From Macrostomum lignano (taxonomy: Eukaryota), in NCBI GenBank assembly GCA_002269645.1, contig NIVC01000570.1, forward strand, positions 372,001 to 436,000: 64,000 nt of DNA, written 5' to 3'. The translations under genes were made by a program, and so were the position numbers. The notes beneath the pieces were generated by a model. That model had not been told where the DNA came from and made no database searches. It worked only from the letters and a program-made list of their open reading frames with translations. Shown here one piece after another: positions 2,087-53,400 of the stretch; positions within the stretch are counted from its first letter, which is position 1, and the number at the start of each line of letters is the position of its first letter.

Positions 2087-2269
2087 CTAACCATGAAAAT
2101 GAACGTGGAAGCCCTTCTTCCTCAGCTTCGGGAACTGCTCCTCCGACAGCTTGGAATCGTCCGAGTCGGACGGATCCTCCTTCGACTCGCTTTCGGCCTT
2201 GGCCTCCGAGGGCTCGACAACGACCAGGGCTGCGAAAACCAGAAGTCCGAGAACCAGTTGCCACTTCAT
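2087..2269 (-). CDS. Secreted His-rich prepropeptide, copy 1 (mature GFHVHFH-G)
   Basis: 60-aa ORF MKWQLVLGLLVFAALVVVEPSEAKAESESKEDPSDSDDSKLSEEQFPKLRKKGFHVHFHG: hydrophobic N-terminus, acidic spacer, RKK, terminal Gly; paralogous to 12 other loci. Confidence 0.85.
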   Translation of the reverse strand: MKWQLVLGLLVFAALVVVEPSEAKAESESKEDPSDSDDSKLSEEQFPKLRKKGFHVHFHG

Positions 2270-3620: not shown

Positions 3621-3683
3621 ATGTCGGAGGAGCAGTTCCCGAAGCTGAGGAAGAAGGGCTTCCACGTTCATTTTCATGGTTAG
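3621..3683 (+). pseudogene. Prepropeptide copy 2, 5'-deleted (MSEEQFPKLRKKGFHVHFHG*)
   Basis: Last 20 codons and 3' flank match the family; upstream sequence joins directly to the far-upstream flank of the unit, so promoter and signal-peptide region are deleted. Confidence 0.8.
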
Positions 3684-11545: not shown

Positions 11546-11642
11546 CAAAAAGTAGCTAGAGCGACAATTTCCTTAGCTTTATAGTGGCTCATTTAAATTG
11601 GCATGGCGCTTTATACCTTTACATTTGAAATTGTATATCTTG

Positions 11643-13495: not shown

Positions 13496-13545
13496 GCGCT
13501 TCTTTGATGTTTAGCAGTTTTGTTGTGTTTTTAAGGTGTTTTAAT

Positions 13546-15185: not shown

Positions 15186-15368
15186 ATGAAGTGGCAACTG
15201 GTTCTCGGACTTCTGGTGCTCGCAGCCCTGGTCGTTGTCGAGCCCTCGGAGGCCAAGGCCGAAAGCGAGTCGAAGGAGGATCCGTCCGACTCGGACGATT
15301 CCAAGCTGTCGGAGGAGCAGTTCCCGAAGCTGAGGAAGAAGGGCTTCCACGTTCATTTTCATGGTTAG
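15186..15368 (+). CDS. Secreted His-rich prepropeptide, copy 3 (GFHVHFH-G)
   Basis: ATG at 15186 within ORF 15078-15368; 60 aa, family architecture intact. Confidence 0.85.
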   Translation: MKWQLVLGLLVLAALVVVEPSEAKAESESKEDPSDSDDSKLSEEQFPKLRKKGFHVHFHG

Positions 15369-15574: not shown

Positions 15575-16125
<551 letters not shown>

Positions 16126-17042: not shown

Positions 17043-17225
17043 CTAACCATGAAAATGAACGTGGAAGCCCTTCTTCCTCAGCTTCGGGAACTGCTCCTCC
17101 GACAACTTGGAATCGTCCGAGTCGGACGGATCCTCCTTCGACTCGCTTTCGGCCTTGGCCTCCGAGGGCTCGACAACGACCAGGGCTGCGAGCACCAGAA
17201 GTCCGAGAACCAGTTGCCACTTCAT
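17043..17225 (-). CDS. Secreted His-rich prepropeptide, copy 4 (GFHVHFH-G)
   Basis: ATG at 17225; protein identical to copy 3; convergent with it. Confidence 0.85.
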   Translation of the reverse strand: MKWQLVLGLLVLAALVVVEPSEAKAESESKEDPSDSDDSKLSEEQFPKLRKKGFHVHFHG

Positions 17226-21305: not shown

Positions 21306-22229
21306 AGCCGCAAACTGTGTCTATGGCATAATTTAAGTGAGAAAGAAATCCATAAATCAGTCATCTCATGCACTGCAAGGTTCAGATTGAAAGCGTTGAA
21401 GCGAAGCAATGATCGACAACATTGTCGTTCCTGTGAACGAATGCGGAACCCGCGGTAAAGAAAGAAGCAGTTACGATAGGCAGTATTGTTACCCTTGCCA
21501 CTGTGTTGGTAGTAGGGGCGTTTAAACTGCGGGGGGGGGCTCGCTTGGCTGGGGCGGGTGCGTGCGGGGTTGCGTGTGCTGCGGGGGGCGGGGGTCACGG
21601 GGTGCTAGCTTGATTTCTTATTTAGTCCGGTCCTCCGCTTGTTCGCCGTGCCTTCGTGTTTGCTCAGATTTTTTTAGCTTTTTTTTCTCATTCGGCTATT
21701 AAATCTTTCGCAAGAAATAAATAATTCTTCGGCTGCCATTTTTTTTTCGACCAGCGGAGGTTCCGTTTCGCGCCATCCCTTGTCTTGCCTCGTTCCTTTC
21801 CCCGCGGTTTAACTGTGAATATCTCGATTTCGAGCATTAATTTTCCAAAATAAATAGGTACTCGTGATCGCATTTGATTTGATTTGAGTGTGCAACGGAT
21901 TAAAAATTAAATTCTCGTAGAGTGCGGGCAGTGCATTGCAGTGTGAAGCGGTGTGTAAGATGCATTCGCACTGAGAAAACGCTTGAGCAGTACTTGTTTG
22001 ATTTCTCGCAGGTGTCAACAAGCAAATAAACGCTACATTATATTCGGGTAAAGCAACGCCTGTCTCTGCTCACGCGAAAGCCTTCACCTCAAACATCGTC
22101 GCTAGACGGACCGGAAACACGTGCCGATCTGATGCGTATAAATTCGTAGTTGCCGACTGCTCAAAGCAACAAGCTCAGAATCGACTCAATCTACACACAG
22201 CTCGAAGAATCGACTCGACTCAAGCAATC

Positions 22230-22412
22230 ATGAAGTGGCAACTGGTTCTCGGACTTCTGCTATTCGCAGCCCTGGCCGTCGCCCAGCCCTCGGAGGCCAA
22301 GGCCGAAAGCGAGTCGAAGGAGGATCCATCCGACTCGGACGATTCCAAGCTGTCGGAGGAGCAGTTCCCGAAGCTGAGGAAGAAGGGCTTCCACGTTCAT
22401 TTTCATGGTTAA
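22230..22412 (+). CDS. Secreted His-rich prepropeptide, copy 5 (GFHVHFH-G)
   Basis: 60-aa ORF in track; intact architecture. Confidence 0.85.
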   Translation: MKWQLVLGLLLFAALAVAQPSEAKAESESKEDPSDSDDSKLSEEQFPKLRKKGFHVHFHG

Positions 22413-22909
22413 ATGAGCCACATCGCACATCGAAGTCGCTTCATCGAAGATTAAGACAACTCAGCTGACCGGACTTTGAACTCTGACTTAGAATCGCCCA
22501 ATTCTAAATGATAGACGTGAAATCTACTCAGTCTTTATTCGCTGATCAGTTTTACCAAATATAACAACCAACACCATCTAATAAGGTACTCAATGCTGCT
22601 ATAACGTTTGCGTTTTTGAGCTTTGTAAATTTCTTCAAGTCGCAGGTCGTCATGTGGAGAACCTCTCGGTGCAGCTACTTGTACGAGTAGATAAGGGTTT
22701 TTAAAAGGAAATGCATCGAAGATTTATTGCAATCGTTACTCTCTGAGTAAGGGGTGTTAGACACGCCGGAGGGTGCCACTGTACATATCGCTGTACTTTG
22801 GCAGGGGTTGAGGTGTGGGGGTGTTGGCCGCGCCGGCCAGCTTAAAGCCTCTGCACCCGGCCCGGCTTGGCTCCGCCGCAATTTTTCAATTTTTTGCTCA
22901 GCCACCGCC

Positions 22910-24027
22910 ATGAGTGCCAGCCCAAAGCGACTCTAAACGTGCGCCAACTCAAGGCTGAGCTGCGAAACAGAGGCCTGCCTACTACGGGCCGCAAACAACA
23001 GCTTGCCAAGCGCTTGTCTACTGCACTCGGTTTAGAGCAAGCTGATGAAGACTTCAACAACTCCGAGATGACTTCTGCTCCGGACGCCGAAGACGGCATC
23101 AGCAGCGCGGGCGAGGCGCCTCCGGGGGCGGGGAGCGACCGGCTGGCTGCGCTGCGACAGGAGGTGGAGCTGTTCGAACTGCAAGTCTTGGAAGGCCGTC
23201 GTCGTGATCTTCAGCAACATCTTCACACTCAGCAGCGCTTGACGGCTCAGCCCCAGCCAGCATCATCATCAGGTGAGCCAAACGCACATGCCAGTCTGCA
23301 GTTGCCCGAGGTTTTTGAATCTGGGATGAGGGAGGCGGCTCAGCTTCAGGCCGCTAATGGCCAGGCTCCGACTCGCAAGTTGCATCTCGTCAGAGACCAT
23401 ATCAAGCTAGCCAGACGACCCGGCTCAGCCAGTCAGGAGCAGTTGGTCGCCACTATGGAGAATGGCTCGCTCTCATTCAGAAAGCAGTAGCCGAAGCTGT
23501 CTAGTATCTCTGCTGGTCAGTGGATCGCGGCCAACTCGATCATCTTGTAAAAGCTGATCAAGGAAAAACTTCCGGCGGCTGCTGGAAGCACTGATGGTCT
23601 CCTGACTGACGTTCTTGGCTACCTTGACTACAATCGCAAGATTGGCGAGCTGCTGGCTGCTGACTACCCGGAGTCCGTAATCTGGGAGTTTGACTAGGAC
23701 TACTGGAGGCTGGTGGCGGAGTCGGGCATGGCGTGGGGTGAGGAGCCCCCTCAGTTGTACCACAAGCACCTCAACGCCGCCAGAAACCCGCGGTTTACGT
23801 TCGCTAAGCAGCCCAGCCAGCAGCAAATCCCGGCAGCAACCAGGCCGATCTGTCTGCGCTTCAACTCCGAGTCCGGGTGCACCCGCCAGAACTGCAGGTT
23901 CCGCCACGTCTGCAAAATCCAAGGCTGCCTGGCAGCGCACCCGGCTCACGCTCACACGCAGTCGCCGCAGTCATTACTCACCGGACAGCTGCCGGGTCAC
24001 GTGACCGGTGCGAGTGCAAAAAACTAA
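22910..24027 (+). pseudogene. gag-like ORF1 with SAP domain and Cys/His zinc finger, frameshifted
   Basis: Kozak-like GCCACCGCCATG; LNVRQLKAELRNRGLPTTGRKQQLAKRL (SAP); CLRFNSESGCTRQNCRFRHVCKIQGCLAAHPAHAH. Confidence 0.7.
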
Positions 24028-25650
24028 TGCCATTTTATCCAGCTGACTGCTCTGCTTTTGTTTCCGATTTTTCTGCTTTTACTTTTTCGCTGCCCATCTC
24101 GTCTGACCTGCAACCTGACGCCTGGAGTGCTCTGCTCAGCGACGACCCAGACCGCGACCTTCTGACGCAAGGCGTCGTCAACGGTTTCGCTCTCACCAAT
24201 GCTGGCCAGCCACCTTTGACTTCGTCCAAGAACCACGCCTCCGCTCTGCTGCACTGCTCTGCTGTGGAAGCCCAGGTCGAGGAGGAGCTGAGCCTTGGGA
24301 GGTACATCCGGTGGAGCGGCCCGATCAAAGTCAACCCCATCGGTGCCCTTCCCAAGTCCGACGGGCGGGCGGGTCCGCCTGATCCATGACCTGTCCTATC
24401 CGAACGGCCAGTCTGTCAACGACTTCTACGACCAACAGAAGCACATCAAGTACTGCACTCTCCAGCAGCTGGTTCGTCATCTCCGTCCGGGACACTACAT
24501 GGCCAAAATTGATTTCAAAAGCGCCTACAGGTCCGTGCCAATCAAACCTGCTGACTACCGGCTCGTCGGCCTCGCCTGGCGGTTTGACTCAGACAGCCAG
24601 GACAGTCTGCTCTGCGACACCAGGCTTCCCTTCGGCGCCAAAGCTGCTTGCAAAGTTTTCCACCGTCTTTCAGCCGCCGTTACCCGGCACATGCACCGGC
24701 TTGGCTTTTCTGCCACGGTGAACTACCTGGATGACTGGGCAGTCGCTGGGAAATCTGAGTCCGAGGCTTTCGCTGCTTTCGATTGCCTGCTGGACATCTT
24801 GCAGCGCCTCGGCTTTACCATCAACTGGGACAAGGTTGTCAGGCCTACGCAATGCATCGACTTCCTTGGCGTGCGCATCAACACCGCTACCGGCACCAAG
24901 TCGCTGCCCGAAGAGAAAGCTCTCGAGACGACAAAGCTGCTGACTCAAACCTGCTCGGAGACTCGGGTGCACATGCGCTCTGCTCAGAAGCTGATTGCCA
25001 AGCTTAGCTGGTTCTGTCAGATTGTCCCTCATGTCAGAGTCTTCCTGCGTCCGCTCTTCGACTGGCTGACAACTGCTGTTGACTGCAAGCTTTGGGTGAC
25101 CGATGAGACCCGCGCCAACCTGTCCTGGTGGCTCAGAGCCCTGGCTTGGCTCCACCCCCCCCCTGGTGTCTTTGTGGCCGCGCTTTGATGAGGAGTTTGC
25201 CATGGAGACTGACAGCAGCCGGTCAGGCGCAGCCGCAGTCATCTGGGGTGCCGAGAGTTTCTGGAGTGTCATCGACTGGGAGCTGGACTGCGGTGGGGTG
25301 TTCAAGGATGTTCATATCAACTTCAAGGAGGCTCTGGCACCTTTGCTGATTATCCTGCACCGTCGCTCTCAGCTATAGAACTGCAAGATTGTCATCTACA
25401 CCGACAGCACCGCTGCGGCTGGCATGATCAATCGCTGAGCTGTCGTGACCCGCGGTTCCTGCAGGTGTACCAGACTGTGGCTCTGCTGTGCGTCAGGAAC
25501 AGCATCAGTTTGGAGGCCTTTCGCCTTCCTGGTCGCATGCAGATTTTTGCTGATGCCGCCTCCCGCATGTTTGTCTCGCAGTCTGAGCTCATTAACTTTT
25601 GCTGCCGCTACTGCCGTACGCTCGTGATCTGCCCGCTTGAGTTCGCGTCG
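24027..25650 (+). pseudogene. Reverse transcriptase and RNase H, frameshifted
   Basis: RLIHDLS, KIDFKSAY, RLPFG, NYLDDW, FLG; RNase H-type ETDSS, HINFKE, YTDST, ADAASR. Confidence 0.9.
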
Positions 25651-25733
25651 CACGCGCTCTCTGCCGCTTCCCAATCTCGCCTCCTTTTGCAGGTCGCCCT
25701 CGCCCTCCGGAGACGCCGCCCGCCCCCCGCGCT

Positions 25734-27660: not shown

Positions 27661-27681
27661 ATTCATCTATTTGATTTGAAT

Positions 27682-30629: not shown

Positions 30630-30818
30630 ATGAAGTGGCAACTGGTTCTCGGACTTCTGCTGTGCGCCGCCCTGGCCGTCGCCCAGCCCACCCAGGAGGA
30701 GGCCAAGGCCGAAAGTGAGTCGAAGGAGGATCCGTCCGACCCAGACGATTCCAAGCTGTCGGAGGAGCATTTCTCGATGCTGAAGAAGAAGGGCTTCCAC
30801 GTTCATTTTCATGGTTAG
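30630..30818 (+). CDS. Secreted His-rich prepropeptide, copy 6 (62 aa, KKK-GFHVHFH-G)
   Basis: ATG at 30630; MKWQLVLGLLLCAALAVAQPTQEEAKAESESKEDPSDPDDSKLSEEHFSMLKKKGFHVHFHG. Confidence 0.85.
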   Translation: MKWQLVLGLLLCAALAVAQPTQEEAKAESESKEDPSDPDDSKLSEEHFSMLKKKGFHVHFHG

Positions 30819-32036: not shown

Positions 32037-32218
32037 TTATTTACCAGGTAAATGAAGATGGAATTTTTTCCTCAGCTTTGGGAACTGCTCCTCTGACATC
32101 TTGGAATCGTCGGAGTCGGACGGATCCTCCTTCGACTCGCTTTCGGCCTTGGCCTCTGAGGGCTCGACAACGACCAGGGCTGCGAGCACCAGAAGTCGAG
32201 AACCAGTTGCCACTTCAT
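32037..32218 (-). pseudogene. Prepropeptide copy 7 (FHLHLP-GK class) with a 1-bp deletion at codon 8
   Basis: CTCGACTT instead of CTCGGACTT; restoring one G gives MKWQLVLGLLVLAALVVVEPSEAKAESESKEDPSDSDDSKMSEEQFPKLRKKFHLHLPGK; may be an assembly error. Confidence 0.8.
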
Positions 32219-33044: not shown

Positions 33045-33540
<496 letters not shown>

Positions 33541-34980: not shown

Positions 34981-35249
<269 letters not shown>

Positions 35250-41400: not shown

Positions 41401-44400
41401 TCCAGGTTGAGAAGGTGAATCTGAAATATATTTTTATGGGAAGATCTAATGCTAGTTTACACTGCCATAAAATTAAGCCAATTTTTACGTTATCTTTCCT
41501 TAATTTTGTCGATTTGAACAATACATACAATACAATGGTGTGAACGAGCCGTTAGTGAGAGTCGTGAGGTGAAGCTGGAGAGTCAGAGTAACTGGAAGAG
41601 TGAGCTTCCATTCGACGCAGGAGACAGACGAGGGAGTTACCTTCTAAACGGAAGAGGTAAAACATTTAAAAGCATCAGCATAGAGCTGCTCACACTCCTC
41701 TGCCGCCATTGCTATCCCAGTGTTGGAGCAGCTCAGGCTCGTTAATCGGCTGCAGGTGAGTCAGCACGCCAATGTCTCCATGAACTGCCAACGGAAATTC
41801 GTTGAACTGCACTCGCTCTGTTGGATTGATGGATTATTGAGGGTAAATTTTAGGCAAGGTACTTTTGTAGTGGAAGGTAAACTAAAAATGACTAGAAAAA
41901 CTTGTTAGATAAAAAACAAGAAATTACAGTTTCTTCCTTATTTGTTGCTGGTGCAACTGCATGTCAACATCTCAAGTTTCCAGTGAGGAGGCAAGTAGTT
42001 AAGGCAGGCCATTCTGATTACCTTTAAGTACACCGATGCGTACGCAGGCACACCACAGAATATACAGGCATAAACTTCAGCCGGGCATTCAGCGGCTTTA
42101 ACATTCTTATTGTCAAGCATCTCAGTACACTCTGTGCCTTGAATGTCTGAGCCCACGCAAACCAAAGTACATGTGCCTTCGCGCGAGATTCAAATGTGTT
42201 GCTGGACGCCGTTTTACTCAACCTGCAAGCGGACGATCAAAGTCAATCGTTCGCTAATCCAACTAGCACACATTTTCGTGGGTCCATATATTATGGCCTG
42301 ACTTTTCTCAGTGTACACAGTAAGTGCCTTTAACGCTCGTTCATACAGCGATCAAATAACGCCAATTTGGTGTCATCACACAACCGGTACATATTTTTCT
42401 CCCTTTTTCCATGGTTCGCGTGATTTGATGGTCAATTAGATGGCTGTGTGGACGTATCCACGAGTGATCTTAAATATATTCACAAAAGTGACAAATGAAT
42501 ATTATTTATTGATCAACGGAATTATATATAGGGTCAATATGCCCACCAAAATTTAGCATATTCCCCGCAACAATATTTTCGCTTTAGCGATTCATTCTAA
42601 ATCTGATCAAAAAATCTAATAGAGACAGTCAATTTTTAACCGCAAGTCATCAATAACGTGAACATTTACCAACAACGATGAAGAAAAGGGTATAAAAGAA
42701 GCTTTTCATTATAGTCACCTCTTAAATTTAGCAAGCAGTGTGTGTGCGTGTGTGTGTGTGTGTCTGTGCTTGAAGCATAAAAAGCTTGAAGTGTGCAGAG
42801 TTTACTTTTACTCGTATCACTAGATAATTGAGTAGTCAGATTTCAGAGTCCGGCCAGCTTCGATAAAGCTACTTCGATGTACGATGTGTAATGAAAGCGA
42901 AAAATCATTATGTGCAAGTAGATGTATCCACAAGTGTTCCACGAGGACTTGACACTTGAAGAAATTACAAAGCTCAACGAAATTATTTTTTTAGTTGTTT
43001 TGTGTGCCCAATTAGATGGTCCTGGTTGTTATATTTGTTATTGCAATAAAGCTGATCAGCGAATAAGTGCTGTGTAGATTTTACGTTCATATTTAAGAAT
43101 CGGGCGATGGCGAGTAGAGTTCCGAGTCAGGTCAGCTGTGAGTTGTCTTAATCTTCCGATCCATGAAGCCAATTGTACGATGTAAGATGTGGCTCATCTA
43201 ACCATGAAAATGAACGTGGAAGCCCTTCTTCTTCAGCATCGAGAAATGCTCCTCCGACAGCTTGGAATCGTCTGGGTCGGACGGATCCTCCTTCGACTCA
43301 CTTTCGGCCTTGGCCTCCTCCTGGGTGGGCTGGGCGACGGCCAGGGCGGCGCACAGCAGAAGTCCGAGAACCAGTTGCCACTTCATGATTGCTTGAGTCG
43401 AGTCGATTCTTCGAGCTGTGTGTAGATTGAGTCGAGTCTGAGCTTGTTGTGTTGAGCAGTCGGCAGCCTCGAATTTATACGCATCGGATCGGCACGTGTT
43501 TCCGGTCCGTTGAGAGACGTTGTTTGAGATGATGGCTTTTGCGTGAGCAGAGACAGGCGTTGCTTTAAAAGAATTTTATGTAGTGTATATTTGTTTTATA
43601 ACAACTGAGCAAAAAAAGTATCACTCTAGTGTTTTCTCAGTTCATCTTACGTATCGCAGTACTCTGCAGTGTACTGCACTGCATTTGACTCTTAATCTGT
43701 TGCATAGTAAAGCCGAATGACACTATCTATCGCCTGCGCAGAATAAATTCGGAATGTCTACAGATTTTTGTTTCGGCTACTTTGTGTCGCTTTCTGTAGT
43801 TTCCGATGGTAGCTCTTAACTTGTCAAAGGTAGTTTTCTGGGTGAGGGCAATATATCCGCCGTATAACTGCAGAGGTCTCATGCTCCACTGTATTTTGCT
43901 GGTAAACTAACATAATGCCGAGAGTATTGGGCTCAACCTCAAAGTTTTAAACCTCTTTCATGGATTGAGCTCTGCGGATAAAGCTCTGGATCAAGTAAAT
44001 GTCTGGGCGTGCAGGGTGACGGCCCTGCCTCCAATGGCAGTGGCGTCGTCACAGTAACCAACCGAAAATGAAGACAGGGCCTGGCCAGGGATCACTCGGA
44101 AGGCACTCATGACCAGGCTTCAGAGCGTCGGCGTGAAAGCTCAGCCTTTGGATCCTCCCTTTCAGAATCTGGTGGAAGGGATTTGCACGCAAAGTTAAGC
44201 AGTGACCGTAGGGATGGAAATCATGTTCATAATGCACCGTGGAGAGTAGCATGAGCTTTGTGATTTTTAAGGGCCACCTGACACACCTTGATGATTACAT
44301 TATCAAAAGCACTTTTAAGGTTGAGAGAAAGACTGAAGGCATAACTGTCGCCCAGCCACGCCCGTTCTACTATTGCATGTAAAGCGAAATGAAGATATGA

Positions 44401-47400
44401 CAGATGCTTCGTGAAGAACTGGGTAGGTACCATCAGCTCCAAGAGAGTTGAAGGGCTTGAGGGTTCCAACCGCACAGGTGATAGAGTCTTTTGTAACGAT
44501 GCCTGCCACCAAAGTGGCTCCCTACATAGGGTTCTGTTCTGGCAGTGGGTAACTTTGCAAAGATGGTGCTGAGCATTTTTTAAATCATTTCTTAAGAGCT
44601 TTTAGTTAGAGAGCCATCATAATTTCTTATGATGGCTAGTTTGGACATTTTTTCCAATTGTCAGGGGCTTGACAAGCCTAGACGTAGGTTTCGTGATCCA
44701 ACTCATTGTAGAATATCCACCACATACCTTGGCATTCCGCACCTCAGAATTGAAGTTTTTGGGTTACAAGTTTTTGTGGCGCTGCGGTGAGGGCTTTTGG
44801 CCTTCGGTCTGAGCTTCTCCGGGCTACACCACGGACTGAAAGAAGTCTTGCCTTTGTAGGCACGGACAAGACAGGCCGCTTCAAAAGCTGCAGTAATGCA
44901 GTCTGTTTGCGTCTCAGCCATTTGATCGAATTCCTCCCAGGCCTCAATCGGACGCTCGTCCGTGAGTTCCTGCAGGTGCAGATCGAAGGTAGCCTTATAG
45001 GCTGTCCAATCAGTGTTGCGGACGTTACCCCTCCAAGTACTCAAGGCCTGGAGCTGAGTTTCCGCGATGTTAAAGGCGATGGAGCAGACGTCAGATAAAG
45101 TGGGTTTTCGTTGACCAGATCAGAGTCTGGGGTAACGAGTGTGGCATCGAGAACATTGGTGCATGTGGCATTTTCGAAGGTAAGAGTGATTCTGTGGTTG
45201 CAGAGCATAATATTTGAAAAATAAATGAGAACAAGAATCTCCTACCCTCTAGCATTGGTGTCTTTGCTGTCCTAGTGCTTATGATGTGTGTTAAGGTCGT
45301 CCCCCCAAGCACAGCTCAGCCTTCTGAAATTCGTAGTATTGCGCTCGGCGCAGTTAGGGTCCCTGTTACCTAGGATATCACCCTATCACCCTGTCACGCC
45401 AAGAGAGATTGTCAGATTGGATGACACAAAGACCTCCATCTGAAAGATCGCCCTCAGCCAAGCCTGGAGATGGCTGGCAGCGAGGATGGTCACTGTAGGG
45501 CAACTGTTCTCCGGGCCACAAACACTGAAGTCAGAGTAGCCATAAGGAATGTTGAGCAACTTACCGTTGCGCATCCAGGGTTCATGGATTAGGATAAGGA
45601 CTGGCCTGTGCAACTTGGCAGTCTTAATAAAAATTTACTGACGCAGAGGGGCAATAGGGCAATAGATTTATTTGTAGACAGAAAGTTGCTCCTTTGGCAG
45701 AGTGGAGGTTAGTCATAATATACTAAATTCAAGTTATGAACGATTCTCCCGTCAAGGAGACTATACAGGATTTAATCCTTTTCTCATTCCGTCGGGGCTC
45801 GTTCGAGAGATTGACTTGGAGATTTCCGCCAGAGTCCTCAGGCTCCGATGACAAAATGGAAGAGATTTCTCCTCTCGACCCCCGAACCCCATGAGAGTAG
45901 CTGAGGAGAGCTCAGATTCTGAAGACTTGGCTTCGTCCTCAAATCCTCCGTTTGTCAGGTTCTGCTCTCAGAGCCCGACCACACTCCTTGACCTAGGATC
46001 ACCGAATCCCAAGTGGGTTCCAATTGCAGGGTACCAAATTTTTGTTCTCATGCCTTCCATTTGACCCTTTGTGGAATTCTAAGTCTAGGGGACGTGGCCT
46101 TCCATGTTGTCAATTTAAAAGCTATCTACTCATGTCGCTCACCTACCGCACACGCAGTTAAGCCACTAAGAGCAGTTGTATTCGAAAAAACACGGGCAAA
46201 TTCCAGGAAATGCTCGTAGTGCGCCAAAGATTCAAAGATAGCGTATTTACGGTTAACTGCGTGTCTTTATTAGCCATATTGTCCGTGACGAATAACGAAT
46301 CGCCACGAGAAATCATAAATATTTTTTCAAATCTTCCTTCATGTAGCTAATATTTTTTGAAACAGTTCATTAAGCTACTAACTCTTTTTTAAATGGTAAA
46401 ATTCGGCGAAAACGAAGAAATAACTGATAATTGCTGACCTTATCGCATCAAGTCGCAAATTATCTATCGCATCAACAAGTTTTCAATGAATTTCATGCGA
46501 CAAAGCATTCTCCACATTACGATTCGCAACTTGAAAAAATTACAAAGCTTAACAACATTAATAATACGAGTATAGTTGCTTTGTGTGCTCAATTCGATTA
46601 TGATGATCTACGAGCTACAAGTCCTCTACATTACGACTTTCGAATTAAAGAAATTTACAACGCTCAACAAAACAAAAATTATAGCTTTACTGGATGCCTA
46701 ATTAGATGGTACTGGTTGTTATATTTGTTATAACTGATCAGCGAATAAGGGCAGTGAAGATTTCAGGTTTACTTTTTAAGAAGTTCAAAGTCAGTGTTCA
46801 AAGTCCTGTCAGCTGTGAGTTGTCTTAATCTTCCGATCCATGAAGCCAATTGTACGATGTAAGATGTGGCTCATCTAACCATGAAAATGAACGTGGAAGC
46901 CCTTCTTCTTCAGCATCGAGAAATGCTCCTCCGACAGCTTGGAATCGTCTGGGTCGGACGGATCCTCCTTCGACTCACTTTCGGCCTTGGCCTCCTCCTG
47001 GGTGGGCTGGGCGACGGCCAGGGCGGCGCACAGCAGAAGTCCGAGAACCAGTTGCCACTTCATGATTGCTTGAGTCGAGTCGATTCTTCGAGCTGTGTGT
47101 AGATTGAGTCGAGTCTGAGCTTGTTGTGTTGAGCAGTCGGCTGCTGCTAATATATACGCATCGGATCGGCACGTGTTTCCGGTCCGTTGAGAGACGTTTG
47201 AAATGAAGACTTTTGCGTGAGCAGAGACAGGCGTTGCTTTACCCGAATATCATGTAGCGTTTGTTTGCTTGTTGACACCCGAGCAATCAAAAAGCACTGC
47301 TCTAGCGTTTTTTTTCAGTGCAAATTTATCCTACGGCACTGCACTTCAATGCACTCTACTTGACTATGTTGCATAGTAAACCCATATGACACTATCTATC

Positions 47401-50400
47401 GTCTGTGGAGAAAAAAATGCGTACAATTTGGGATATCTACAGATTGTTATTTCGGCTACTGCGTGTCTATTTCTGCAGGTTCTGGTGGTTGTTCTCGACA
47501 TGTCAGATGGTTTTTTGCAATCCTTAGATTCGATTGTTTACTCGATCTGGGTAAGCGGAAAGCAGAAAATACGGAAAAACCAGAAAATAAATGCTTAGTA
47601 TGGTAGACTTAATAGGCTGATAGACCTAATATGGATTTGCTGACGTACTTAATGGGGATCGATTTGCTTGGCAAATCATAATTTGAAGGGGTTCAAACTT
47701 AACTCAGCTACTACTACTTAGGCTGTATATTGATACTGCTTCAAGAGTCTCAGTGAAAGGAGCTTTAAGTCAAGGGAAATTAAAGTGTATGGTCGGTCTT
47801 ACCTTCTCTATTTTCTCCCTGGTCTTTCTATTTATGCTGTAAAAGTTTCCTATGGCAATCGTCAAGAGTCATAAGCGATATTACATGCGGTACGTAAAAA
47901 TTGGGCGACAAAGGGTAGGCCATAGAATAATGCATCCCAGAATAATGCATGTGAAGCACGAGTAGTTGTCGAATATTTATCAATTCTAAGACATACTACA
48001 CAATCTACCATTAAGACCCACTTAATTTACTGGGAAATGTAATAAACTCCGTCAGCTACCTTAGGAAGCGAGCGACAACAGTTCAAAACTAAGGATTATT
48101 TTATTAGTTCGACTCACAGATACTATAACAATTAACATACTATTTATTACTATCTGTGGTTTCACCAGAGAATATCGAGTATACATAGACTGCCAATAGA
48201 GGGGTCTAAAGTGAAGCCGATTTTATTCCTTCCGGGACTCTACTTTTTGGCCATAGACATTGAGTTTTAGCGGGCGCAGTTAAAAAAATTGGCTTGCAAT
48301 ATTCCAATATTGAGACTGTCTATGGTAAAATCCCATTTACCACAATGCATTCAGTCGGTTTCACGGCCCGCTGGAAATGTCTATGACAAAGTCAGAAGAA
48401 AGCGGGGTCAAGGGGCGCTGAGCCCCCTCGTGGGGGTGTGGGGGCGGAGCCCCCACATTAGCACACCAACACTCTAGACAAAGAAAGAGATAATAAAATC
48501 TAAAAATAGTCTATGGCCAAAACTCCTTATTTTGCGAATTGGGACGATGGAGCCAGTAAGTAACATAGGAAAAATGCGAGCGTAGCGAGTAGGCTAACTA
48601 TAACTCAATTGTCAATTCCAAGTCAGCTAGGCATCAGAAACAGTTCCATATATTGATCATATAGTTTAGCTTAAAGGCCATCGAGAAGAAGTACACCTCA
48701 GAGGACGAATTTCAAACCATTCAAGATCGGTGAAGCGCATGAATTGAAAATGAGACCGACATAATTTTACCTTTTTTGTATCAAATAAGCTTTTAATTTG
48801 ACACCGCACGTTGAAAATTTCATGAACACATTGATGAGCATCGTCACTTTCTCACAACAAGATCGGCGAAAAATAAATGAATACATTGACAACCAAGATT
48901 GGCAACAATTAGCGGGATCGCTGAACATTTGCGTCAGTCTGCCAGAACTGAAATCGTCAAACGCGTCCAATCCGGTCGTGTTCAAGCTGTTTCAAGAGAC
49001 CAGGACGCAGCCTCGTCGTTCCTTTGAGCGAATATCATGTGGGAATCCCGGTAGAGACAGTGAAAAAGAGAAACTAAGAATCTATCGATCTACCCGATAG
49101 AAGAGTTTATCAAATTGAAAAAGGCGATAAAAGTTTTTAAAAACAAAATCACCATTACAGTCTTGAGGGGATTGAAGAAAGTGAGATTTAGCAAAAATCG
49201 TATTGTAGAAAACTACCCCGCCACGAAAGCTACTAGCCTTTATCTCGTCTTGCAAATTATTCTCATCTTCTTTTACACTCTCTACCGGGATTCTAAAGTG
49301 GCAGTTTTGCTACTTTGAATAACTTTCGCATACGCTCCTATTTAGTGAAGAAATGAATACCTGGTTGTATTGTGAATATTTCATGAAAATGCAGCACTAA
49401 GTCATGGCAAGTTGCCAGGTAAACATTTAAGGGGTAAGAAGTCGTGAGGGAAAGTAGTCCCCTCTAATGAGTAAGTAGCCAACGTGAGATAAAGATGTGA
49501 ATTAGAAACCTTTTAAATAAAGATCTGCCAGGTAAACCAAGCTCCATCAACTATATCAGACAATCCAGATTGAGTCCATCTCGCAGCCCCAATCAACAAT
49601 CTGAACCTTATCTAGTGGTTACTTTAATGAGAGCTCAGGGGGCTTTGCAGTGATTAAAGAATATATTCAGACAGTTTGATGTCGAAGGATCGAGATGAAG
49701 AAAGAATAAAAGCTGGCAAACTGTGCGCTTCCATGCATATCTGGCCGGCCATGCGTCCGGTTGTCGGCTCACTAAATCCGCTTACCCGTATCACAACTTC
49801 AAACAATCAAAGTACCCTGGTAGTTCTAAGTAGCACCTGACAAGTTGAGAACCGCCATCAGAAACTGCAGAAATCGACACGCAGTAGCCGAAATACATAT
49901 CTGTAGACATCCCGATTTCGCAACTTTTATCTCCACAATCGATAGATATAGTGTCATTTGGTTTTCTTATGCTAATCATTAAAATCCGTATAGAGTGCCG
50001 CGCAGTGCAGTGTGTAGGATAAATTCACACTTAGAAACGCTGGAGCCTTACTTGTTTGATTGCTCAGGTGTCATAAAGCAAATAGACGCTGCAATGATAT
50101 TTGGTTAAAGTAACGCTTCTCTGCTCAAGCGAAAGATTGCAAATCAAACAACGTCGCTCATCGGATCAGACAGGAAACACGTGCCGATCCGATGAGCATA
50201 AATTCGCCGACTGCTGACTGCTCAAGAAAACAAGCTCAGACTCAACACGACTCAAGCAATCATGAAGTGGCAACTGGTTCTCGGACTTCTGCTGTTTGCA
50301 GCCCTGGCCGTCGCTGGGCCCTCAGAGGCCAAGGCCGAAAGTGAGTCGAAGGAGGATCCGTCCGACTCGGACGATTCCAAGATGTCGGAGGAGCAGTTCC

Positions 50401-53400
50401 CGAAGCTGAGGAAGAAATTCCATCTCCATTTACCTGGTAAATAAGCAGCATCGTACGTCGAAGTCGCTTCATCGAAGATTAAGACAACTCACAGCTGACC
50501 GTACTTTGGACTCTGATCGGAACCGCCCAACTCCTAAAAATTAAGCGTGAAATCTACACAGCCCTTATTCGCTGATCAGTTTTAACAAATATAACAACCA
50601 GCACGATCTAAATAAGCACCTAAAAATCCAAAATATTTGTGTTGACAAGCTTTTTCATTTTTGTCAAGTCGCAAGTTGTCATGTGGAGCACTTGAAGAAA
50701 CGAGTGTAAATCGTCTTGTAGTTAATAATTTGTCGCAGGAAATTCAACAAAAAAGTGTTGAATTATAAGATACTCATTAGGAAGTTTTTGGTTATTCATT
50801 TATTCATTTCACAATTTCAAATAAACTCAACTTTATTGTTGATTTCACAGTGCTCAACAGTAAAACTACCAAGAGAGGGGAGCTTCTGGACCTTCAACAG
50901 GTGGCCCCATGTGACTATGGACGAGCTGTTGCAAAATTCTCCTGTTTCGCCGATCAAGCTTCAATAATGGGCAAGCCTCAACTGCTGGACATGCGTCATC
51001 AACCTGACGCCGTCGGTACCTTCAACAGATTAGCTGAGCCTGGATGAAGGCAAGTGATCAACGAAGTCAGAGCTTCAGACACATATGGTCGACGTACTGA
51101 TGAAATTCGGAGGCTGCACTGAGGCGCAGGGCTGATTGGCGCACAGGGGTGTACTGAATACACTAGGACTTCATCATCAAGGGAAAAATCCGATCTTCTG
51201 GATCTTCTGGCAGAATCGTCGAATATCTCAACGGTCCGGAGGGCTGGCGAATTTTTTCTTGTTTGAGACGGTGCGCAACAAAAATTTTGCCCGTGTTCTT
51301 GAATTCCGTATGCCTGCGTTGCTCCGTTCTGGCGCAACAAAAAATTGTCATTGGGGAATCCCCCCTTCTTGGTAGTTCGACGGGCGGAAAATGGCTTGGT
51401 ATTCCTACTAGCTCGTAGTATTCTACATGGATAGCGAGGCCAAAAAACGATTTAAATGTACAAGGATATGATACAATGAATTAAGAATGAGCGGGGTCAT
51501 GTGGTGTCAGGTAAAAGGTGTACAATGCTTTTTTGAATTGCGAAATGATAATGATGAGATACATCTGCGCGCACTTTGAGCCTTCGCTGTCGAGTCGTGT
51601 TATAAATCTTATTGAAACCAAAATTAATTGTATTCTGTCTATTGTCCCTTGTCAAATTGTCACGCCCTTCACTTAGAGATTTCTCCTGAAATGGGCATTT
51701 GCTTCATGATGGCTCCATGAATCGAACGTTTTATTAAACGGCGCAACTAAGTCAAAAAACAAGAGAACATTCTGTGAGTTAGCGTGACTCAGCCGCAATT
51801 ATGTCAAACTCTAAAGCTGCATAACATGTTTAGTCTTATTTTGGTGACGAGTTACAAATCACCCCAACAATATAATAAATGACCGGAAAAGTTTCGAACT
51901 GCTATTTAAGCACTACGCAATAGTCCATAAAGTAGTAAGCTTGTTGCGATCGAAAAATATTTGCGAAAATGAATGAATAAGCCATAAGCGCTGAATAATT
52001 ACCATATCGAATCAACACATTTTGCTACATTTCGTGCGACAATTCACTTACTGCAAGACGCTACAAGTCTCTACAAGTTCTCCACATTACGACTTCTGAA
52101 TTAAAGAAATTTACAACGCTCAACAACACAAAACTTATGGCTTTATTGGGTGCCTAATTAGATGGTACTGGTTGTTATATTTATTATAACTGATCAGCGA
52201 ATAAGGGCAGTGAAGATTTTAGGTTTTCTATTTAAGAAGTTCAAAGTCAGAGTTCCGAGTCAGGTCAGCTGTGAGTTGTCTTAATCTTCCGATCCATGAA
52301 ACCACTTGTGCGATGTAAGATGTGGCTCATCTAACCATGAAAATGAACGTGGAAGCCCTTCTTTTCCAGCTTGGAGAACTGCTCCTCCGACAGCTTGGAA
52401 TCGTCCGAGTCGGACGGATCCTCCTTCGACTCACTTTCGGCCTTGGCCTCCTCCTGGGTGGGCTGGGCGACGGCCAGGGCGGCGCAAAGCAGAAGTCCGA
52501 GAACCAGTTGCCACTTCATGATTGCTTGAGTCGAGTCGATTCTTCGAGCTGTGTGTAGATTGAGCCGAGTCTGAGCTTGTTGTGTTCAGCTGTCGGAAGC
52601 TTCAAATTTATACGCATCGGATCGGCACGTGTTTCCGGTCCGTTGAGAGACGTTGTTTGAGCTGATGGCTTTTGCGTGAGCAGAGACAGGCGTTGCTTTA
52701 ACCGAAAAGCATGAAGCGTTTATTTTCTTGTTGACACCTGAGCAATGCTAGAACAAGTACCGCTCTAACATTTTCTCGGTGCAAATTTATTCTACGTACC
52801 GCAGTAGACTGCACTGCATTGCATTTTGCTCTTTATCAGATGCATTAGTAAAGCCAAATGACACTATCTATCGAATATGGAAAATATAGTATATGGCTTC
52901 GCGATTGTTTTCTACAATTTGTTATTTGGGCTGCTGCTAAATTCAACGTTGACATCCATTTCTGTAGTTTCCAATTGGGGTTCTAAGCTTGCCATGTGCT
53001 ATTTAGAACTCCTTATATTTGATTCCTTAATGGACTCGGGTGAGCGGATTTCATGAACAGATTTCATAGTGACATCAAGGATATCTCTTCCCTAGAGGCG
53101 CAAGATAATGTCTCGGAGCTGATGACAGGGCAGGAGAGAAGCGCCATTGGATTGCCTGCAGGTTCTCATGTTCCTGCCAGTAACGCCTGTGGTGCTACGC
53201 TCTGCAGTACAAAAGCTGATGACAAGATGGTGTTAGTCCAGTGTGCTTAGCATGGGTTGCAACCGCACATTTAAGAAAATTCAAACACTATAGGTAGTCT
53301 CGTCTGACTGCATTGAACCATCGGTTTTTCAATGGAACTCTGCTGGGTTTCAGCGTAAGTGATGATAGCGAAGTAGCGACGTAGCGACTCGAAAAAAGAG

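What the first reader, a model, noticed from the sequence alone, without database searches (positions are those of the whole stretch)
22386..22412. Predicted mature peptides are amidated, His-alternating metal-binding candidates; GFH is an ATCUN motif
Seen: after the basic site come GFHVHFH-G-stop (8 full copies plus the fragment) or FHLHLP-G-K-stop (3 copies). Established: prohormone-convertase cleavage after KK, carboxypeptidase trimming and PAM amidation would give GFHVHFH-NH2 and FHLHLP-NH2. A free N-terminal X-X-His is the ATCUN Cu/Ni site found in piscidin-type antimicrobial peptides, and X-His is a GHK-type Cu site. Alternating hydrophobic/His heptapeptides such as the designed IHIHIQI self-assemble into Zn-binding catalytic amyloid. 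Inference: these may be natural Cu/Zn-binding or self-assembling peptides, kept inactive by the acidic spacer until cleavage.
Basis: partly seen in the sequence, partly recalled or inferred. Interest (0 to 1): 0.82.

Follow-up and report, generated by a model that had tools for sequence, protein, structure and literature searches.

The report
Flatworm His-rich amidated defence-like peptide genes
The window holds a cluster of small, transcribed flatworm (Macrostomum lignano) genes, each a signal peptide, an acidic spacer, Lys-Lys and a 6-7-residue peptide alternating hydrophobic residues with histidine and ending in glycine; they are the histidine branch of an undescribed family whose other members carry arginine at those positions and look like antimicrobial peptides, so the copper-binding "ATCUN" motif is probably a side effect.

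Summary
Window 22230-22412(+) encodes MKWQLVLGLLLFAALAVAQPSEAKAESESKEDPSDSDDSKLSEEQFPKLRKK-GFHVHFH-G-stop. There are 8 intact GFHVHFHG genes plus one 3' fragment, and 3 FHLHLPGK genes, one with a 1-bp frameshift.

The DNA is Macrostomum lignano. Each copy is a 620-900 bp intronless gene with its own E-box and TATA promoter. GenBank models of these genes derive from RNA-seq.

A profile search of 1.84 billion proteins found about 25 further Macrostomum proteins. They share the signal peptide, an acidic propiece, KK and a C-terminal Gly. Their mature peptides are FIHIHF, FVRVHVRF, IFRVRVRI, FVRVRVRL, WLRVRARVRI and Arg-rich peptides up to 31 aa.

The His codons (CAT/CAC) align with Arg CGT codons of paralogues. 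Across subfamilies the signal peptide is conserved (89% identity) and the mature core is not (34%). Propiece negative charge tracks mature positive charge (rho -0.79). This is the layout of host-defence peptide families.

Cleavage, amidation and masking by the acidic spacer are well supported. Dedicated ATCUN or metal function is not: His-3 sits where paralogues have Arg-3, and FHLHLP lacks it. The resemblance to designed Zn-binding LHLHL/IHIHI amyloid peptides is real but untested.

No activity, tissue or peptide data exist.

The parts
21948..22662 (+). Whole duplicated gene unit of the focal copy: promoter, 5'UTR, intronless CDS and 3'UTR
   Evidence: Self-BLAST shows that only this ~620-900 bp unit is shared between copies, at 75-92% identity. 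The multiple alignment of 12 copies shows conservation rising about 300 nt upstream of the ATG and fading about 300 nt after the stop.
22118..22123 (+). E-box CACGTG inside the conserved module CCGGAAACACGTGCC, 19 nt upstream of the TATA box
   Evidence: Present in all but one gene examined, His-type and Arg-type alike; the exception is the Logan contig L005, which has AACGTG/AATGTG-like variants further upstream. The E-box start lies 17-19 nt before the TATA start (19 nt in nearly all), except in copy 53958, which has an 11-bp deletion there. A regulatory role is inferred.
22137..22142 (+). TATAAA box, 93 nt upstream of the ATG
   Evidence: Conserved as [CT]ATA[AT]A in all copies. The RNA-seq-derived GenBank models P0002 and P0003, which are open at the 5' end, begin 51-54 nt before the ATG, about 35-40 nt downstream of the TATA box. 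The transcription start is inferred.
22230..22283 (+). Signal peptide MKWQLVLGLLLFAALAVA (n-region MK, 16-residue hydrophobic core, A-V-A at -3/-1)
   Evidence: Read from the sequence. It is the most conserved protein segment across the family: 89% amino-acid identity and pN/pS 0.31 between subfamilies. All invariant alignment columns lie here. No signal-peptide predictor was available, so the cleavage site is inferred.
22284..22385 (+). Acidic propiece QPSEAKAESESKEDPSDSDDSKLSEEQFPKL ending in the basic site R-K-K (K-K at 22380-22385)
   Evidence: Net charge is -3 with the RKK counted. K-K is invariant in all window copies. Propiece charge correlates with mature-peptide charge across the family.
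22386..22412 (+).
   Evidence: The nucleotide sequence is identical in all 9 copies except for TAG versus TAA at the stop.
22558..22563 (+). Conserved AATATA (AATAAA in some copies) poly(A)-signal-like hexamer in the 3'UTR, about 150 nt after the stop
   Evidence: The block A[AC][CAT]AAATATAAC is conserved in all copies. Function is inferred.
2087..2269 (-). GFHVHFHG gene copy (intact)
3621..3683 (+). 3' fragment of a GFHVHFHG gene (MSEEQFPKLRKKGFHVHFHG-stop plus 3'UTR; no signal peptide or promoter)
15186..15368 (+). GFHVHFHG gene copy (intact)
17043..17225 (-). GFHVHFHG gene copy (intact)
30630..30818 (+). GFHVHFHG gene copy (62 aa; spacer variant ...EEHFSMLKKK)
32037..32218 (-). FHLHLPGK copy with a 1-bp deletion in codon 8 (pseudogene or assembly indel)
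43198..43386 (-). GFHVHFHG gene copy (intact)
46875..47063 (-). GFHVHFHG gene copy (intact)
50262..50444 (+). FHLHLPGK gene copy (intact)
52331..52519 (-). GFHVHFHG gene copy (basic site E-K-K)
53958..54146 (+). FHLHLPGK gene copy with a divergent spacer; identical to P0005
57628..57735 (+). Decayed relic of a family member of the MKWQLAL type. The promoter and 5'UTR are recognisable from about 57545, but the coding region is scrambled.

Best explanation
The GFHVHFH-Gly and FHLHLP-Gly-Lys genes are the histidine-substituted branch of a multigene family of small secreted prepropeptides. The family is known so far only from Macrostomum and has not been described.

Each gene is an autonomous, intronless, TATA-driven unit. 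It encodes four parts: a highly conserved signal peptide; an anionic propiece; a Lys-Lys processing site; and a short peptide in which hydrophobic and cationic residues alternate (template X-X-(+)-X-(+)-X-(+)), ending in Gly or Gly-Lys.

Inferred mechanism:
1. The precursor enters the ER and the signal peptide is removed.
2. The acidic propiece neutralises and solubilises the cationic, aggregation-prone C-terminus during transport.
3. A subtilisin-like convertase cleaves after KK.
4. A carboxypeptidase trims the basic residues.
5. Peptidylglycine alpha-amidating activity converts the terminal Gly to an amide.
6. The products are GFHVHFH-NH2 and FHLHLP-NH2, released together with Arg-type paralogues such as IFRVRVRI-NH2 and FVRVRVRL-NH2, which share the same promoter module.

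The mature peptides are amphipathic beta-strands. The most likely role is host defence or another surface- or membrane-active function. In the His branch, charge and self-association would be switched by pH (about +1 at pH 7.4, +3 to +4 near pH 5) and possibly by Zn or Cu.

What is shown and what is inferred. Shown: gene anatomy, copy number, family membership, conservation pattern, codon relationships and transcript-based gene models. Inferred: processing, amidation, secretion, biophysical behaviour and biological role.
For: Organism and transcription. The closest proteins are M. lignano hypothetical proteins at 66-93% identity. P0004 and P0005 are encoded exactly in the window, and P0005 is also encoded on GCA_002269645.1 contig NIVC01000181.1. 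That GenBank annotation was built from a genome-guided RNA-seq transcriptome with TransDecoder ORFs (PMC5730564).

Family. A profile HMM search of 1.84 billion representatives, followed by a profile word search, found about 25 further proteins. They have the same signal peptide, an acidic propiece, KK and mature peptides FIHIHF, FVRVHVRF, IFRVHVRF, IFRVRVHI, IFRVRVRI, FVRVRVRL, WLRVRARVRI, FVRVRARIRL, FIRARVRVRL and IFRVRARIHI, plus 18-31-aa Arg-rich peptides. Nearly all end in G or GK.

Mixed arrays. FVRVHVRF, FIHIHF (two copies), WLRVRARVRI, IFRVRVRI and FVRLRVRI genes lie within about 30 kb on contig NIVC01000619.1. Separately, P0001, P0002 and P0007 (GFHVHFH type) are reported on a contig of the same length, 208,600 bp.

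Shared promoter and 5'UTR. The same module is present in His-type and Arg-type genes.

Codons. His CAT/CAC occupy the positions of Arg CGT in paralogues, forming a series FVR-L-R-V, FVR-V-H-V, FIH-I-H-F, GFH-V-H-F.

Evolutionary pattern. Between subfamilies the signal peptide is 89% identical with pN/pS 0.31, while the mature core is 34% identical with pN/pS 0.94. Within the young His classes the peptide segment is the most conserved part of the gene.

Charge balance. Spearman -0.79 between propiece and mature charge.

Amphipathicity. The beta-strand hydrophobic moment (180 degrees) is 0.6-1.45 for the short members (6-10 aa), against 0.14-0.79 for a helical angle.

Processing machinery. An M. 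lignano PC2 homologue exists, shows a nervous-system expression pattern, and is essential (PMC4490696).
Against: There is no experimental datum on the peptides: no peptidomics, tissue localisation, antimicrobial assay or metal-binding assay.

I found no expression information for these gene IDs in four papers' supplements or in full text.

Six to seven residues and a charge near +1 at neutral pH are at or below the lower limit for known natural antimicrobial peptides (own knowledge). That size is more typical of neuropeptides.

The only documented M. lignano convertase (PC2) shows a nervous-system pattern, which would fit a neuropeptide reading equally well.

The pN/pS and charge statistics use few codons and non-independent paralogues.

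The presence of PAM in M. lignano was not tested here.
Confidence: 0.55

Rival explanations
1. Neuropeptide or peptide-hormone precursors. GFHVHFH-NH2 and FHLHLP-NH2 would be amidated signalling peptides released from neurons or endocrine cells and acting on a receptor.
For: The architecture is the classical neuropeptide one: signal peptide, spacer, dibasic site, 6-7-residue peptide and Gly. Within the His classes the mature peptide is the most conserved segment. M. lignano has a PC2 homologue expressed in the nervous system (PMC4490696). The peptide length is typical for neuropeptides (own knowledge).
Against: The same prepro scaffold carries peptides of 6 to 31 residues with charges up to +12, and only 34% identity in the core. 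That is not how neuropeptide families evolve. There are 12-13 gene copies in 64 kb and dozens genome-wide. Propiece charge tracks peptide charge. No homologue was found outside Macrostomum-like sequences among 1.84 billion proteins. The motif is absent from the supplementary files held for the planarian peptide-hormone study (Collins et al. 2010, PMC2953531) and from the searchable literature.
Confidence: 0.2
2. One reading: dedicated metal-binding peptides (ATCUN Cu/Ni site in GFH, X-His site in FH) or natural Zn-dependent self-assembling or catalytic amyloid peptides, selected for that chemistry.
For: GFHVHFH and FIHIHF have His at position 3 behind a predicted free N-terminus, and FHLHLP has His at position 2. 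The i/i+2 His pattern on one face of a beta-strand is the same design as acetyl-LHLHLRL-amide and acetyl-IHIHIQI-amide, which form Zn-binding esterase fibrils (PMC10008563). The three-His peptide is strictly conserved in 9 copies. Some natural peptides, such as piscidins and neuromedin C, carry functional ATCUN sites (own knowledge).
Against: Position 3 is Arg in most paralogues, and the His codons are single transitions away from those Arg codons. The ATCUN register is lost in FHLHLP within the same cluster. Partially substituted intermediates exist (FVRVHVRF, IFRVRVHI), as expected for drift or tuning of a cationic position rather than construction of a metal site. The designed amyloid peptides are N-acetylated, whereas these would carry a charged free amine. 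No experimental data exist.
Confidence: 0.12
3. Another secreted role unrelated to microbes or signalling, such as mucus, rhabdite or adhesive-gland cargo, a deterrent or allomone, an anti-fouling or diatom-directed factor, or a granule-packing peptide.
For: The products are secretory, the genes are multicopy and they share one promoter module, which suggests one cell type. The animal lives on biofilms and feeds on diatoms (own knowledge).
Against: Nothing specific points to any of these. The cationic amphipathic composition and anionic propiece are most simply those of membrane-active defence peptides.
Confidence: 0.1
4. Not a functional peptide gene: a repeated or mobile ~0.8-kb element with a fortuitous ORF, or an assembly artefact.
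For: Only the ~620-900 bp unit is duplicated, dispersed in both orientations among transposons and satellites. One fragment, one frameshifted copy and one relic exist.
Against: Ten of the 11 full-length copies keep an intact ORF at 8-25% nucleotide divergence (the twelfth, at about 3621-3683, is only a 3' fragment). Coding sequence is less variable than the flanks, and the peptide segment is least variable of all. Changes within the peptide are synonymous. RNA-seq-based gene models exist. The family shows coherent protein-level features.
Confidence: 0.03

Closest known systems
Amphibian preprodermaseptin-type and Hydra arminin-type host-defence peptide precursors (own knowledge of these families; analogy only)
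   Same: A conserved signal peptide and an anionic propiece, a basic processing site, and a hypervariable cationic C-terminal peptide that is often amidated through a terminal Gly. Large, clustered, lineage-restricted multigene families. Charge compensation between propiece and mature peptide.
   Different: There is no sequence similarity: no Pfam hit and no hits outside Macrostomum. The processing site is K-K rather than the frog K-R. Most mature peptides are only 6-10 residues and are strictly alternating beta-strand amphiphiles, not 20-30-residue helices. A His-only branch exists. Activity is untested.
Designed short beta-sheet cationic antimicrobials of the (X-R/K)n-NH2 type, e.g. IRIKIRIK-NH2, and the VK/VR-repeat MAX/PEP6R hairpin arms (own knowledge; not retrieved)
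   Same: Alternating aliphatic or aromatic and Arg residues, 8-10 residues, C-terminal amide. IFRVRVRI-NH2, FVRVRVRL-NH2 and WLRVRARVRI-NH2 are natural sequences with the same design.
   Different: These are gene-encoded and made as precursors. The window's own members have His instead of Arg/Lys and are therefore nearly uncharged at neutral pH.
[quoted passage not shown]
   Same: Hydrophobic/His alternation with His at i and i+2, 6-7 residues, C-terminal amide. The string LHLHL occurs inside FHLHLP, and IHIH occurs inside FIHIHF.
   Different: The natural peptides would have a free, charged N-terminus rather than an acetyl cap. FHLHLP ends in Pro. No Zn binding, fibril formation or catalysis has been tested. 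They sit in a family where the same positions are usually Arg.
ATCUN (amino-terminal Cu/Ni, H2N-X-X-His) peptides such as piscidins 1/3 (FFH.., FIH..), histatin-5, neuromedin C and albumin (own knowledge)
   Same: GFHVHFH and the paralogue FIHIHF would expose H2N-X-X-His after KK cleavage.
   Different: The motif is not conserved in the sister class (FHLHLP) or in the family (IFR, FVR, WLR). It is a formal sequence match only.
Flatworm neuropeptide precursors (FLP/NPF/npp genes; planarian prohormones of Collins et al. 2010, PMC2953531)
   Same: Signal peptide, dibasic cleavage and a Gly amidation donor, with PC2-dependent processing known in flatworms.
   Different: No FHxH-type peptide appears in the supplementary files held for the planarian peptide-hormone study. 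The family-wide hypervariability and the Arg-rich long members are unlike neuropeptide families.

Membership tests
Macrostomum MKWQL[AV]LGLLL prepropeptide family (undescribed; defined here) | Conserved N-terminal signal peptide MKWQ[LI][AV]LGLLL..A.P | tested here: met
   Profile E-values of 1e-34 to 6e-06 for the listed members (P0013 and P0014 reach only 5e-04 to 6e-04). All invariant columns lie in the signal peptide.
Macrostomum MKWQL[AV]LGLLL prepropeptide family (undescribed; defined here) | Acidic propiece followed by K-K and a C-terminal alternating hydrophobic/cationic peptide ending in Gly or Gly-Lys | tested here: met
Macrostomum MKWQL[AV]LGLLL prepropeptide family (undescribed; defined here) | Shared promoter and 5'UTR module (CCGGAAACACGTGCC, then TATA 19 nt on; ...CGACTCAAGCAATC-ATG) | tested here: met
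   Present in both His-type and Arg-type genes on three contigs.
C-terminally amidated secretory peptides (PAM substrates) | C-terminal Gly directly followed by a stop or by basic residue(s) | tested here: met
   G-stop in 9 copies and G-K-stop in 3. Gly is kept in about 20 of 22 divergent family members and across a frame-changing indel.
C-terminally amidated secretory peptides (PAM substrates) | Amidating enzyme present and co-expressed; amidated product detected | not testable with these tools
   No PAM search was run. PMC4490696 mentions GYIRFamide-immunoreactive neurons in M. lignano, which implies the chemistry exists in the animal. Mass spectrometry is needed.
Prohormone-convertase-processed precursors | Dibasic site N-terminal to the peptide, and a convertase in the organism | tested here: met
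   K-K is invariant in all window copies. A PC2 homologue is reported in M. lignano (PMC4490696). Actual cleavage has not been shown.
ATCUN motif peptides | His at position 3 of the mature peptide, with residue 2 not Pro | tested here: met
   G-F-H in GFHVHFH. Not met by FHLHLP, where His is at positions 2 and 4.
ATCUN motif peptides | Free alpha-amino terminus exactly two residues before the His (depends on the true cleavage point), and high-affinity Cu(II)/Ni(II) binding | not testable with these tools
   Needs peptidomics and spectroscopy or ITC.
ATCUN motif peptides | Motif conserved among homologues, as expected if it is the selected feature | tested here: not met
   Position 3 is Arg in most paralogues (IFR, FVR, WLR). 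The register is shifted in FHLHLP.
Cationic host-defence (antimicrobial) peptide gene families | Conserved prepro region with a rapidly diverging cationic amphipathic mature peptide | tested here: met
   Signal peptide 89% identity and pN/pS 0.31, against mature core 34% identity and pN/pS 0.94. Charges are +3 to +12 in Arg members, with a high beta-strand hydrophobic moment in the short members.
Cationic host-defence (antimicrobial) peptide gene families | Anionic propiece balancing the charge of the mature peptide | tested here: met
   Spearman rho -0.79, p = 1e-5, n = 22 non-independent paralogues.
Cationic host-defence (antimicrobial) peptide gene families | Antimicrobial activity, infection-inducible or barrier-tissue expression | not testable with these tools
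   No expression or activity data were found.
Bilaterian neuropeptide families | Mature peptide conserved across species, or orthologues in other flatworms | tested here: not met
   No hits outside Macrostomum-type sequences among 1.84 billion representatives. The motif is absent from the supplementary files held for the planarian peptide-hormone study.
Designed catalytic amyloid peptides (Ac-X-H-X-H-X-Z-X-NH2) | Alternating hydrophobic/His core with a C-terminal amide | tested here: met
   Sequence comparison with PMC10008563. The amide is predicted only.
Designed catalytic amyloid peptides (Ac-X-H-X-H-X-Z-X-NH2) | Zn-dependent cross-beta fibrils with esterase activity | not testable with these tools
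   Requires synthesis, ThT/TEM and a pNPA assay.

The most novel reading that the evidence does not exclude
An animal genome encodes, in many copies, natural counterparts of two classes of de novo designed peptides. The (hydrophobic-Arg)n-amide members match designed beta-sheet antimicrobials. The (hydrophobic-His)n-amide members match designed Zn-binding catalytic or self-assembling amyloid formers. The His branch (GFHVHFH-NH2, FHLHLP-NH2, FIHIHF-NH2) would be a pH- or metal-gated variant: it assembles or becomes membrane-active only on acidification or Zn/Cu binding. An N-terminal ATCUN site in some members would add redox chemistry.
Probability: 0.15. Interest if true: 0.85.

Novelty: new variant of a known kind. 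Interest (0 to 1): 0.58.

Why it matters
If the reading is right, four things follow.

- It defines the first gene-encoded cationic defence-peptide family of a free-living flatworm model that already has transgenesis and RNAi, so the hypothesis can be tested directly.
- The peptides are among the shortest natural ones of this kind (6-10 residues). They converge on sequences that peptide chemists arrived at by design.
- The Arg-to-His series within one gene family is a natural experiment on how charge, pH dependence and metal affinity are tuned on a fixed amphipathic beta-strand.
The copper-site motif is most likely incidental, so experiments should compare His and Arg paralogues rather than test copper binding alone.

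Tried and rejected
- Literature search for the peptide strings, the signal-peptide string and the gene IDs: 0 papers.
- Gene IDs in the supplements of four M. lignano papers (PMC5816591, PMC5730564, PMC12896417, PMC5946080): 0 occurrences. No expression or tissue information could be obtained.
- McVeigh et al. 2009 (PMC2749192): not held.
- Supplements held for the planarian peptide-hormone study (PMC2953531): no FHLH, FHVH, HLHL, HFHG or HVHF strings.
- Pfam: no family above threshold for any member.
- Rfam: nothing in the window.
- The sigma-70 promoter and terminator scan is irrelevant for a eukaryote and was disregarded.
- Searches for Macrostomum or free-living flatworm antimicrobial peptides found no description of such a family.
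- Whole-CDS dN/dS among window copies (about 0.56) was uninformative on its own because all non-synonymous peptide changes lie between the two classes. I replaced it with within-class diversity by region and between-subfamily comparison.
- Considered and rejected: that the ORF at 10855-11592(-), with 'eIF2B/hexapeptide' Pfam hits, is a neighbouring gene. It coincides with an 18-bp tandem repeat and is a translation artefact.
- The source organism of Logan run SRR31628392 (P0011) could not be identified.
Full report
**1. The observation**

Window 22386-22412(+) reads GGC TTC CAC GTT CAT TTT CAT GGT TAA, which is G-F-H-V-H-F-H-G-stop. It ends a 60-codon ORF, 22230-22412: MKWQLVLGLLLFAALAVAQPSEAKAESESKEDPSDSDDSKLSEEQFPKLRKKGFHVHFHG.

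A six-frame scan for FH[VLIF]H[FLIV][HP] found 12 hits, all in this gene context and none elsewhere.
- Eight are intact GFHVHFHG genes: 2087-2269-, 15186-15368+, 17043-17225-, 22230-22412+, 30630-30818+, 43198-43386-, 46875-47063-, 52331-52519-.
- One is a 3' fragment at about 3621-3683+.
- Three are FHLHLPGK genes: 50262-50444+, 53958-54146+ and 32037-32218-.
- The copy at 32037-32218- has a 1-bp deletion in codon 8.

A further decayed relic lies at 57628-57735+.

**2. Organism and gene anatomy**

The closest proteins are Macrostomum lignano 'hypothetical proteins' at 66-93% identity. P0004 and P0005 are encoded exactly in the window. P0005 is also encoded on contig NIVC01000181.1 of assembly GCA_002269645.1, but that locus differs from the window in spacing and copy content. 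So the window is the same region in another assembly or haplotype, or a paralogous region.

That GenBank annotation was derived from a genome-guided RNA-seq transcriptome with TransDecoder ORFs (PMC5730564). The gene models therefore imply transcription.

Aligning the 12 copies shows a conserved unit of about 850-900 bp:
- about 300 nt of upstream sequence ending in the module CCGGAAACACGTGCC (E-box at 22118-22123);
- a TATAAA box 19 nt further on (22137-22142);
- a conserved 5'UTR of about 60-90 nt;
- an intronless CDS of 183-189 nt;
- a 3'UTR of about 190 nt with a conserved AATATA or AATAAA hexamer.

Two 5'-open GenBank models, P0002 and P0003, begin 51-54 nt before the ATG, about 35-40 nt after the TATA box. 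That fits TATA-directed initiation, which is an inference.

Only this 620-900 bp unit is shared between copies, at 75-92% identity. The intergenic DNA differs and is full of satellites and transposon remnants.

**3. Constraint**

Within the eight GFHVHFH genes the 27-nt peptide-plus-stop segment has one variable site, TAG versus TAA, and pi = 0.009. The other regions are more variable:

| Region | pi |
|---|---|
| peptide + stop | 0.009 |
| spacer | 0.061 |
| signal peptide | 0.080 |
| promoter | 0.155 |
| 3'UTR | 0.16 |

Among the three FHLHLPGK copies (the frameshifted one included) the only two changes in the peptide are synonymous: CAT/CAC and CTT/CTC.

The two classes differ at the stop by a 1-nt indel. 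GGT TAG ATG AGC becomes GGT AAA TAA GC. The result is still Gly followed by a basic residue and a stop. So the peptide and its terminal Gly are under purifying selection.

**4. The decisive result: a larger family**

A profile of the window proteins was searched against 1.84 billion representative proteins. A profile word search followed. Together they recovered about 25 further proteins. All but one are named M. lignano; the exception is a Logan contig from run SRR31628392 of unknown organism.

They share the signal peptide MKWQLALGLLLCAALAVA, an acidic propiece and KK. Their C-terminal peptides are:
- FIHIHF-G
- FVRVHVRF-G, IFRVHVRF-G, IFRVRVHI-G
- IFRVRVRI-G, FVRLRVRI-G, FVRVRVRL-G
- WLRVRARVRI-G, FVRVRARIRL-G, FIRARVRVRL-G, IFRVRARIHI-G
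- Longer Arg-rich peptides: FRIRIRWGRVARNVLRLL-GK, WLLRRIRIRWRRVLRVASRVYRIYRYLPI-GK, FLRVRLPRVRMPRVRLPRVRLPRLRVRFRWSKK, WFSRWFRITYRRRGGERRYLRSYFRL-G and WRRRRRFRWRKAIRVAGKVAKAVL

His-type and Arg-type genes are neighbours on contig NIVC01000619.1. They carry the same promoter and 5'UTR module, which suggests co-expression. That is an inference.

**5. What the histidines are**

The family template is X-X-(+)-X-(+)-X-(+). At codon level the series is:

| Peptide | Codons |
|---|---|
| FVRLRV | TTC GTC CGT CTT CGT GTC |
| FVRVHV | TTC GTC CGT GTT CAT GTT |
| FIHIHF | TTC ATC CAT ATT CAT TTC |
| GFHVHF | GGC TTC CAC GTT CAT TTT |
| FHLHL | TTC CAT CTC CAT TTA |

The His codons therefore sit at the Arg CGT positions, one transition away. 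Members with 0, 1, 2 and 3 His all exist.

His-3 of GFHVHFH is homologous to Arg-3 of IFR, FVR and WLR. FHLHLP has lost the first residue and with it the X-X-His register. The ATCUN match is formally correct for GFHVHFH and FIHIHF, but it is not a conserved feature of the family.

**6. Family-level signatures**

Between subfamilies the signal peptide is 89% identical with pN/pS 0.31. The last 12 propiece codons are 52% identical. The six-codon mature core is 34% identical with pN/pS 0.94, yet the hydrophobic/cationic pattern is retained. These figures rest on few codons and non-independent pairs.

Propiece net charge falls from about -2 to -15 as mature charge rises from about +1 to +12. Spearman rho is -0.79 with p = 1e-5, again from non-independent paralogues.

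The 180-degree (beta-strand) hydrophobic moment exceeds the helical moment for all short members.

This combination is the hallmark of host-defence and toxin peptide families such as frog preprodermaseptins and Hydra arminins (own knowledge; analogy only). The features are:
- a conserved prepro region;
- a charge-compensating anionic propiece;
- a hypervariable cationic amphipathic C-terminus;
- Gly-dependent amidation;
- a lineage-restricted clustered multigene family.

There is no sequence similarity to those families and no Pfam hit.

**7. Most likely mechanism (inferred)**

1. The precursor enters the ER and the signal peptide is removed near A-V-A|Q.
2. The acidic propiece masks and solubilises the cationic, aggregation-prone tail.
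3. A convertase cleaves after K-K. A PC2 homologue is documented in M. lignano (PMC4490696).
4. A carboxypeptidase trims the basic residues.
5. The Gly is converted to an amide.
6. A cocktail of Arg-type and His-type beta-strand amphiphiles is secreted.

The His-type products would be about +1.2-1.3 at pH 7.4 and about +2.8 to +3.7 near pH 5. Their membrane affinity and self-association should therefore be switched by pH and plausibly by Zn or Cu. I put 0.55 on a host-defence or membrane-active role.

Rivals:

| Explanation | Confidence |
|---|---|
| Neuropeptide | 0.20 |
| Dedicated metal or catalytic-amyloid chemistry | 0.12 |
| Other secretory role | 0.10 |
| Non-functional repeat | 0.03 |

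**8. Comparison with the known**

[quoted passage not shown] LHLHL lies within FHLHLP and IHIH within FIHIHF. The natural peptides would have a free N-terminus, though, and nothing has been measured.

The Arg-type paralogues resemble designed (X-R/K)n-amide beta-sheet antimicrobials (own knowledge).

No paper in the searchable library contains these sequences or gene IDs, or describes such a family in Macrostomum or free-living flatworms. The proteins are annotated only as hypothetical.

**9. Verdict**

ATCUN or Cu binding as the purpose of the sequence is not supported by family comparison.

I rate this a new variant of a known kind: an undescribed flatworm defence-like prepropeptide family with unusually short alternating peptides and a His-substituted branch. 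Interest is moderate to high because it is directly testable in a transgenic, RNAi-capable model. All functional claims remain inference.

Noticed in passing
window 22110-22143, and the equivalent position in every copy; also L001-L004: A composite promoter module CCGGAAACACGTGCC (an ETS-like GGAA next to a palindromic E-box CACGTG) lies a fixed 19 nt upstream of the TATA box. It is conserved in all His-type and Arg-type family genes on several contigs. Copy 53958 has an 11-bp deletion between the E-box and the TATA box. It is a candidate cell-type or immune-response enhancer.
   Followed up: partly
window 57545-57800 (+): A decayed 13th family member. The promoter, 5'UTR and ATGAAGTGGCAGCTCGCTCTC (MKWQLAL, the Arg-type signal peptide) are recognisable, but the rest of the ORF is scrambled or deleted. 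Arg-type genes therefore once sat in this His-type cluster.
   Followed up: partly
window 32037-32218 (-): The third FHLHLPGK copy has a single-base deletion in a GG run of the signal peptide. It is either a very young pseudogene or a long-read homopolymer error in the assembly.
   Followed up: no
window 10855-11592 (-): A 245-aa ORF hits Pfam LbH_EIF2B and Hexapep. It coincides with an 18-bp tandem repeat (CAAGCATCCCCCAGATAG, 35 copies, 10919-11545). The 'hexapeptide repeat' hit is an artefact of translating a satellite.
   Followed up: yes
window 6947-8208, 8612-10117, 11638-13512, 60658-61224, 61784-62664: Large minisatellite arrays (periods 23, 48, 23, 17 and 23 nt; 31-82 copies) and long tetranucleotide arrays (ATAG/ATCT/ACAG at 4405-4630, 15576-16124, 33046-33561, 34981-35355, 63426-63807) fill the space between the peptide genes.
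   Followed up: no
window 19384-21111 (-): A PiggyBac-type transposase remnant (Pfam DDE_Tnp_1_7, E = 2.7e-27), split over several overlapping ORFs and therefore frameshifted, lies just upstream of the focal gene.
   Followed up: partly
window ~22800-28000 (+): A GC-rich block (55-59% GC, against about 40% in the flanks) carries a reverse-transcriptase ORF (RVT_1, 24295-25188) and other long ORFs. It is probably a retroelement inserted immediately downstream of the focal gene.
   Followed up: no
window 33190-34757 and 34981-36553: A 1.58-kb direct repeat at 98.5% identity, each copy containing a 28-nt minisatellite and an ATCT array. It could be a recent tandem duplication or the terminal repeats of an element.
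   Followed up: no
L005 (Logan SRR31628392 contig, 929 bp): A family member from an unidentified sequencing run encodes a 31-residue Pro/Arg-rich repeat peptide (FLRVRLPRVRMPRVRLPRVRLPRLRVRFRWS-KK) behind the same signal peptide, with a related GGAAAAACGTGGCC...CATAAATA promoter. The family may extend to another strain or species and to PR-rich peptide types.
   Followed up: partly
L004 8695-8913 (-), compared with P0021/P0029: The paralogue WLRVRARVRVGSRRRSRSG appears to derive from WLRVRARVRIG by a change that reads through the old Gly-stop into a new Arg/Ser tail, which again ends in Gly. This is another case where the C-terminal Gly is re-established after a frame or stop change.
   Followed up: no
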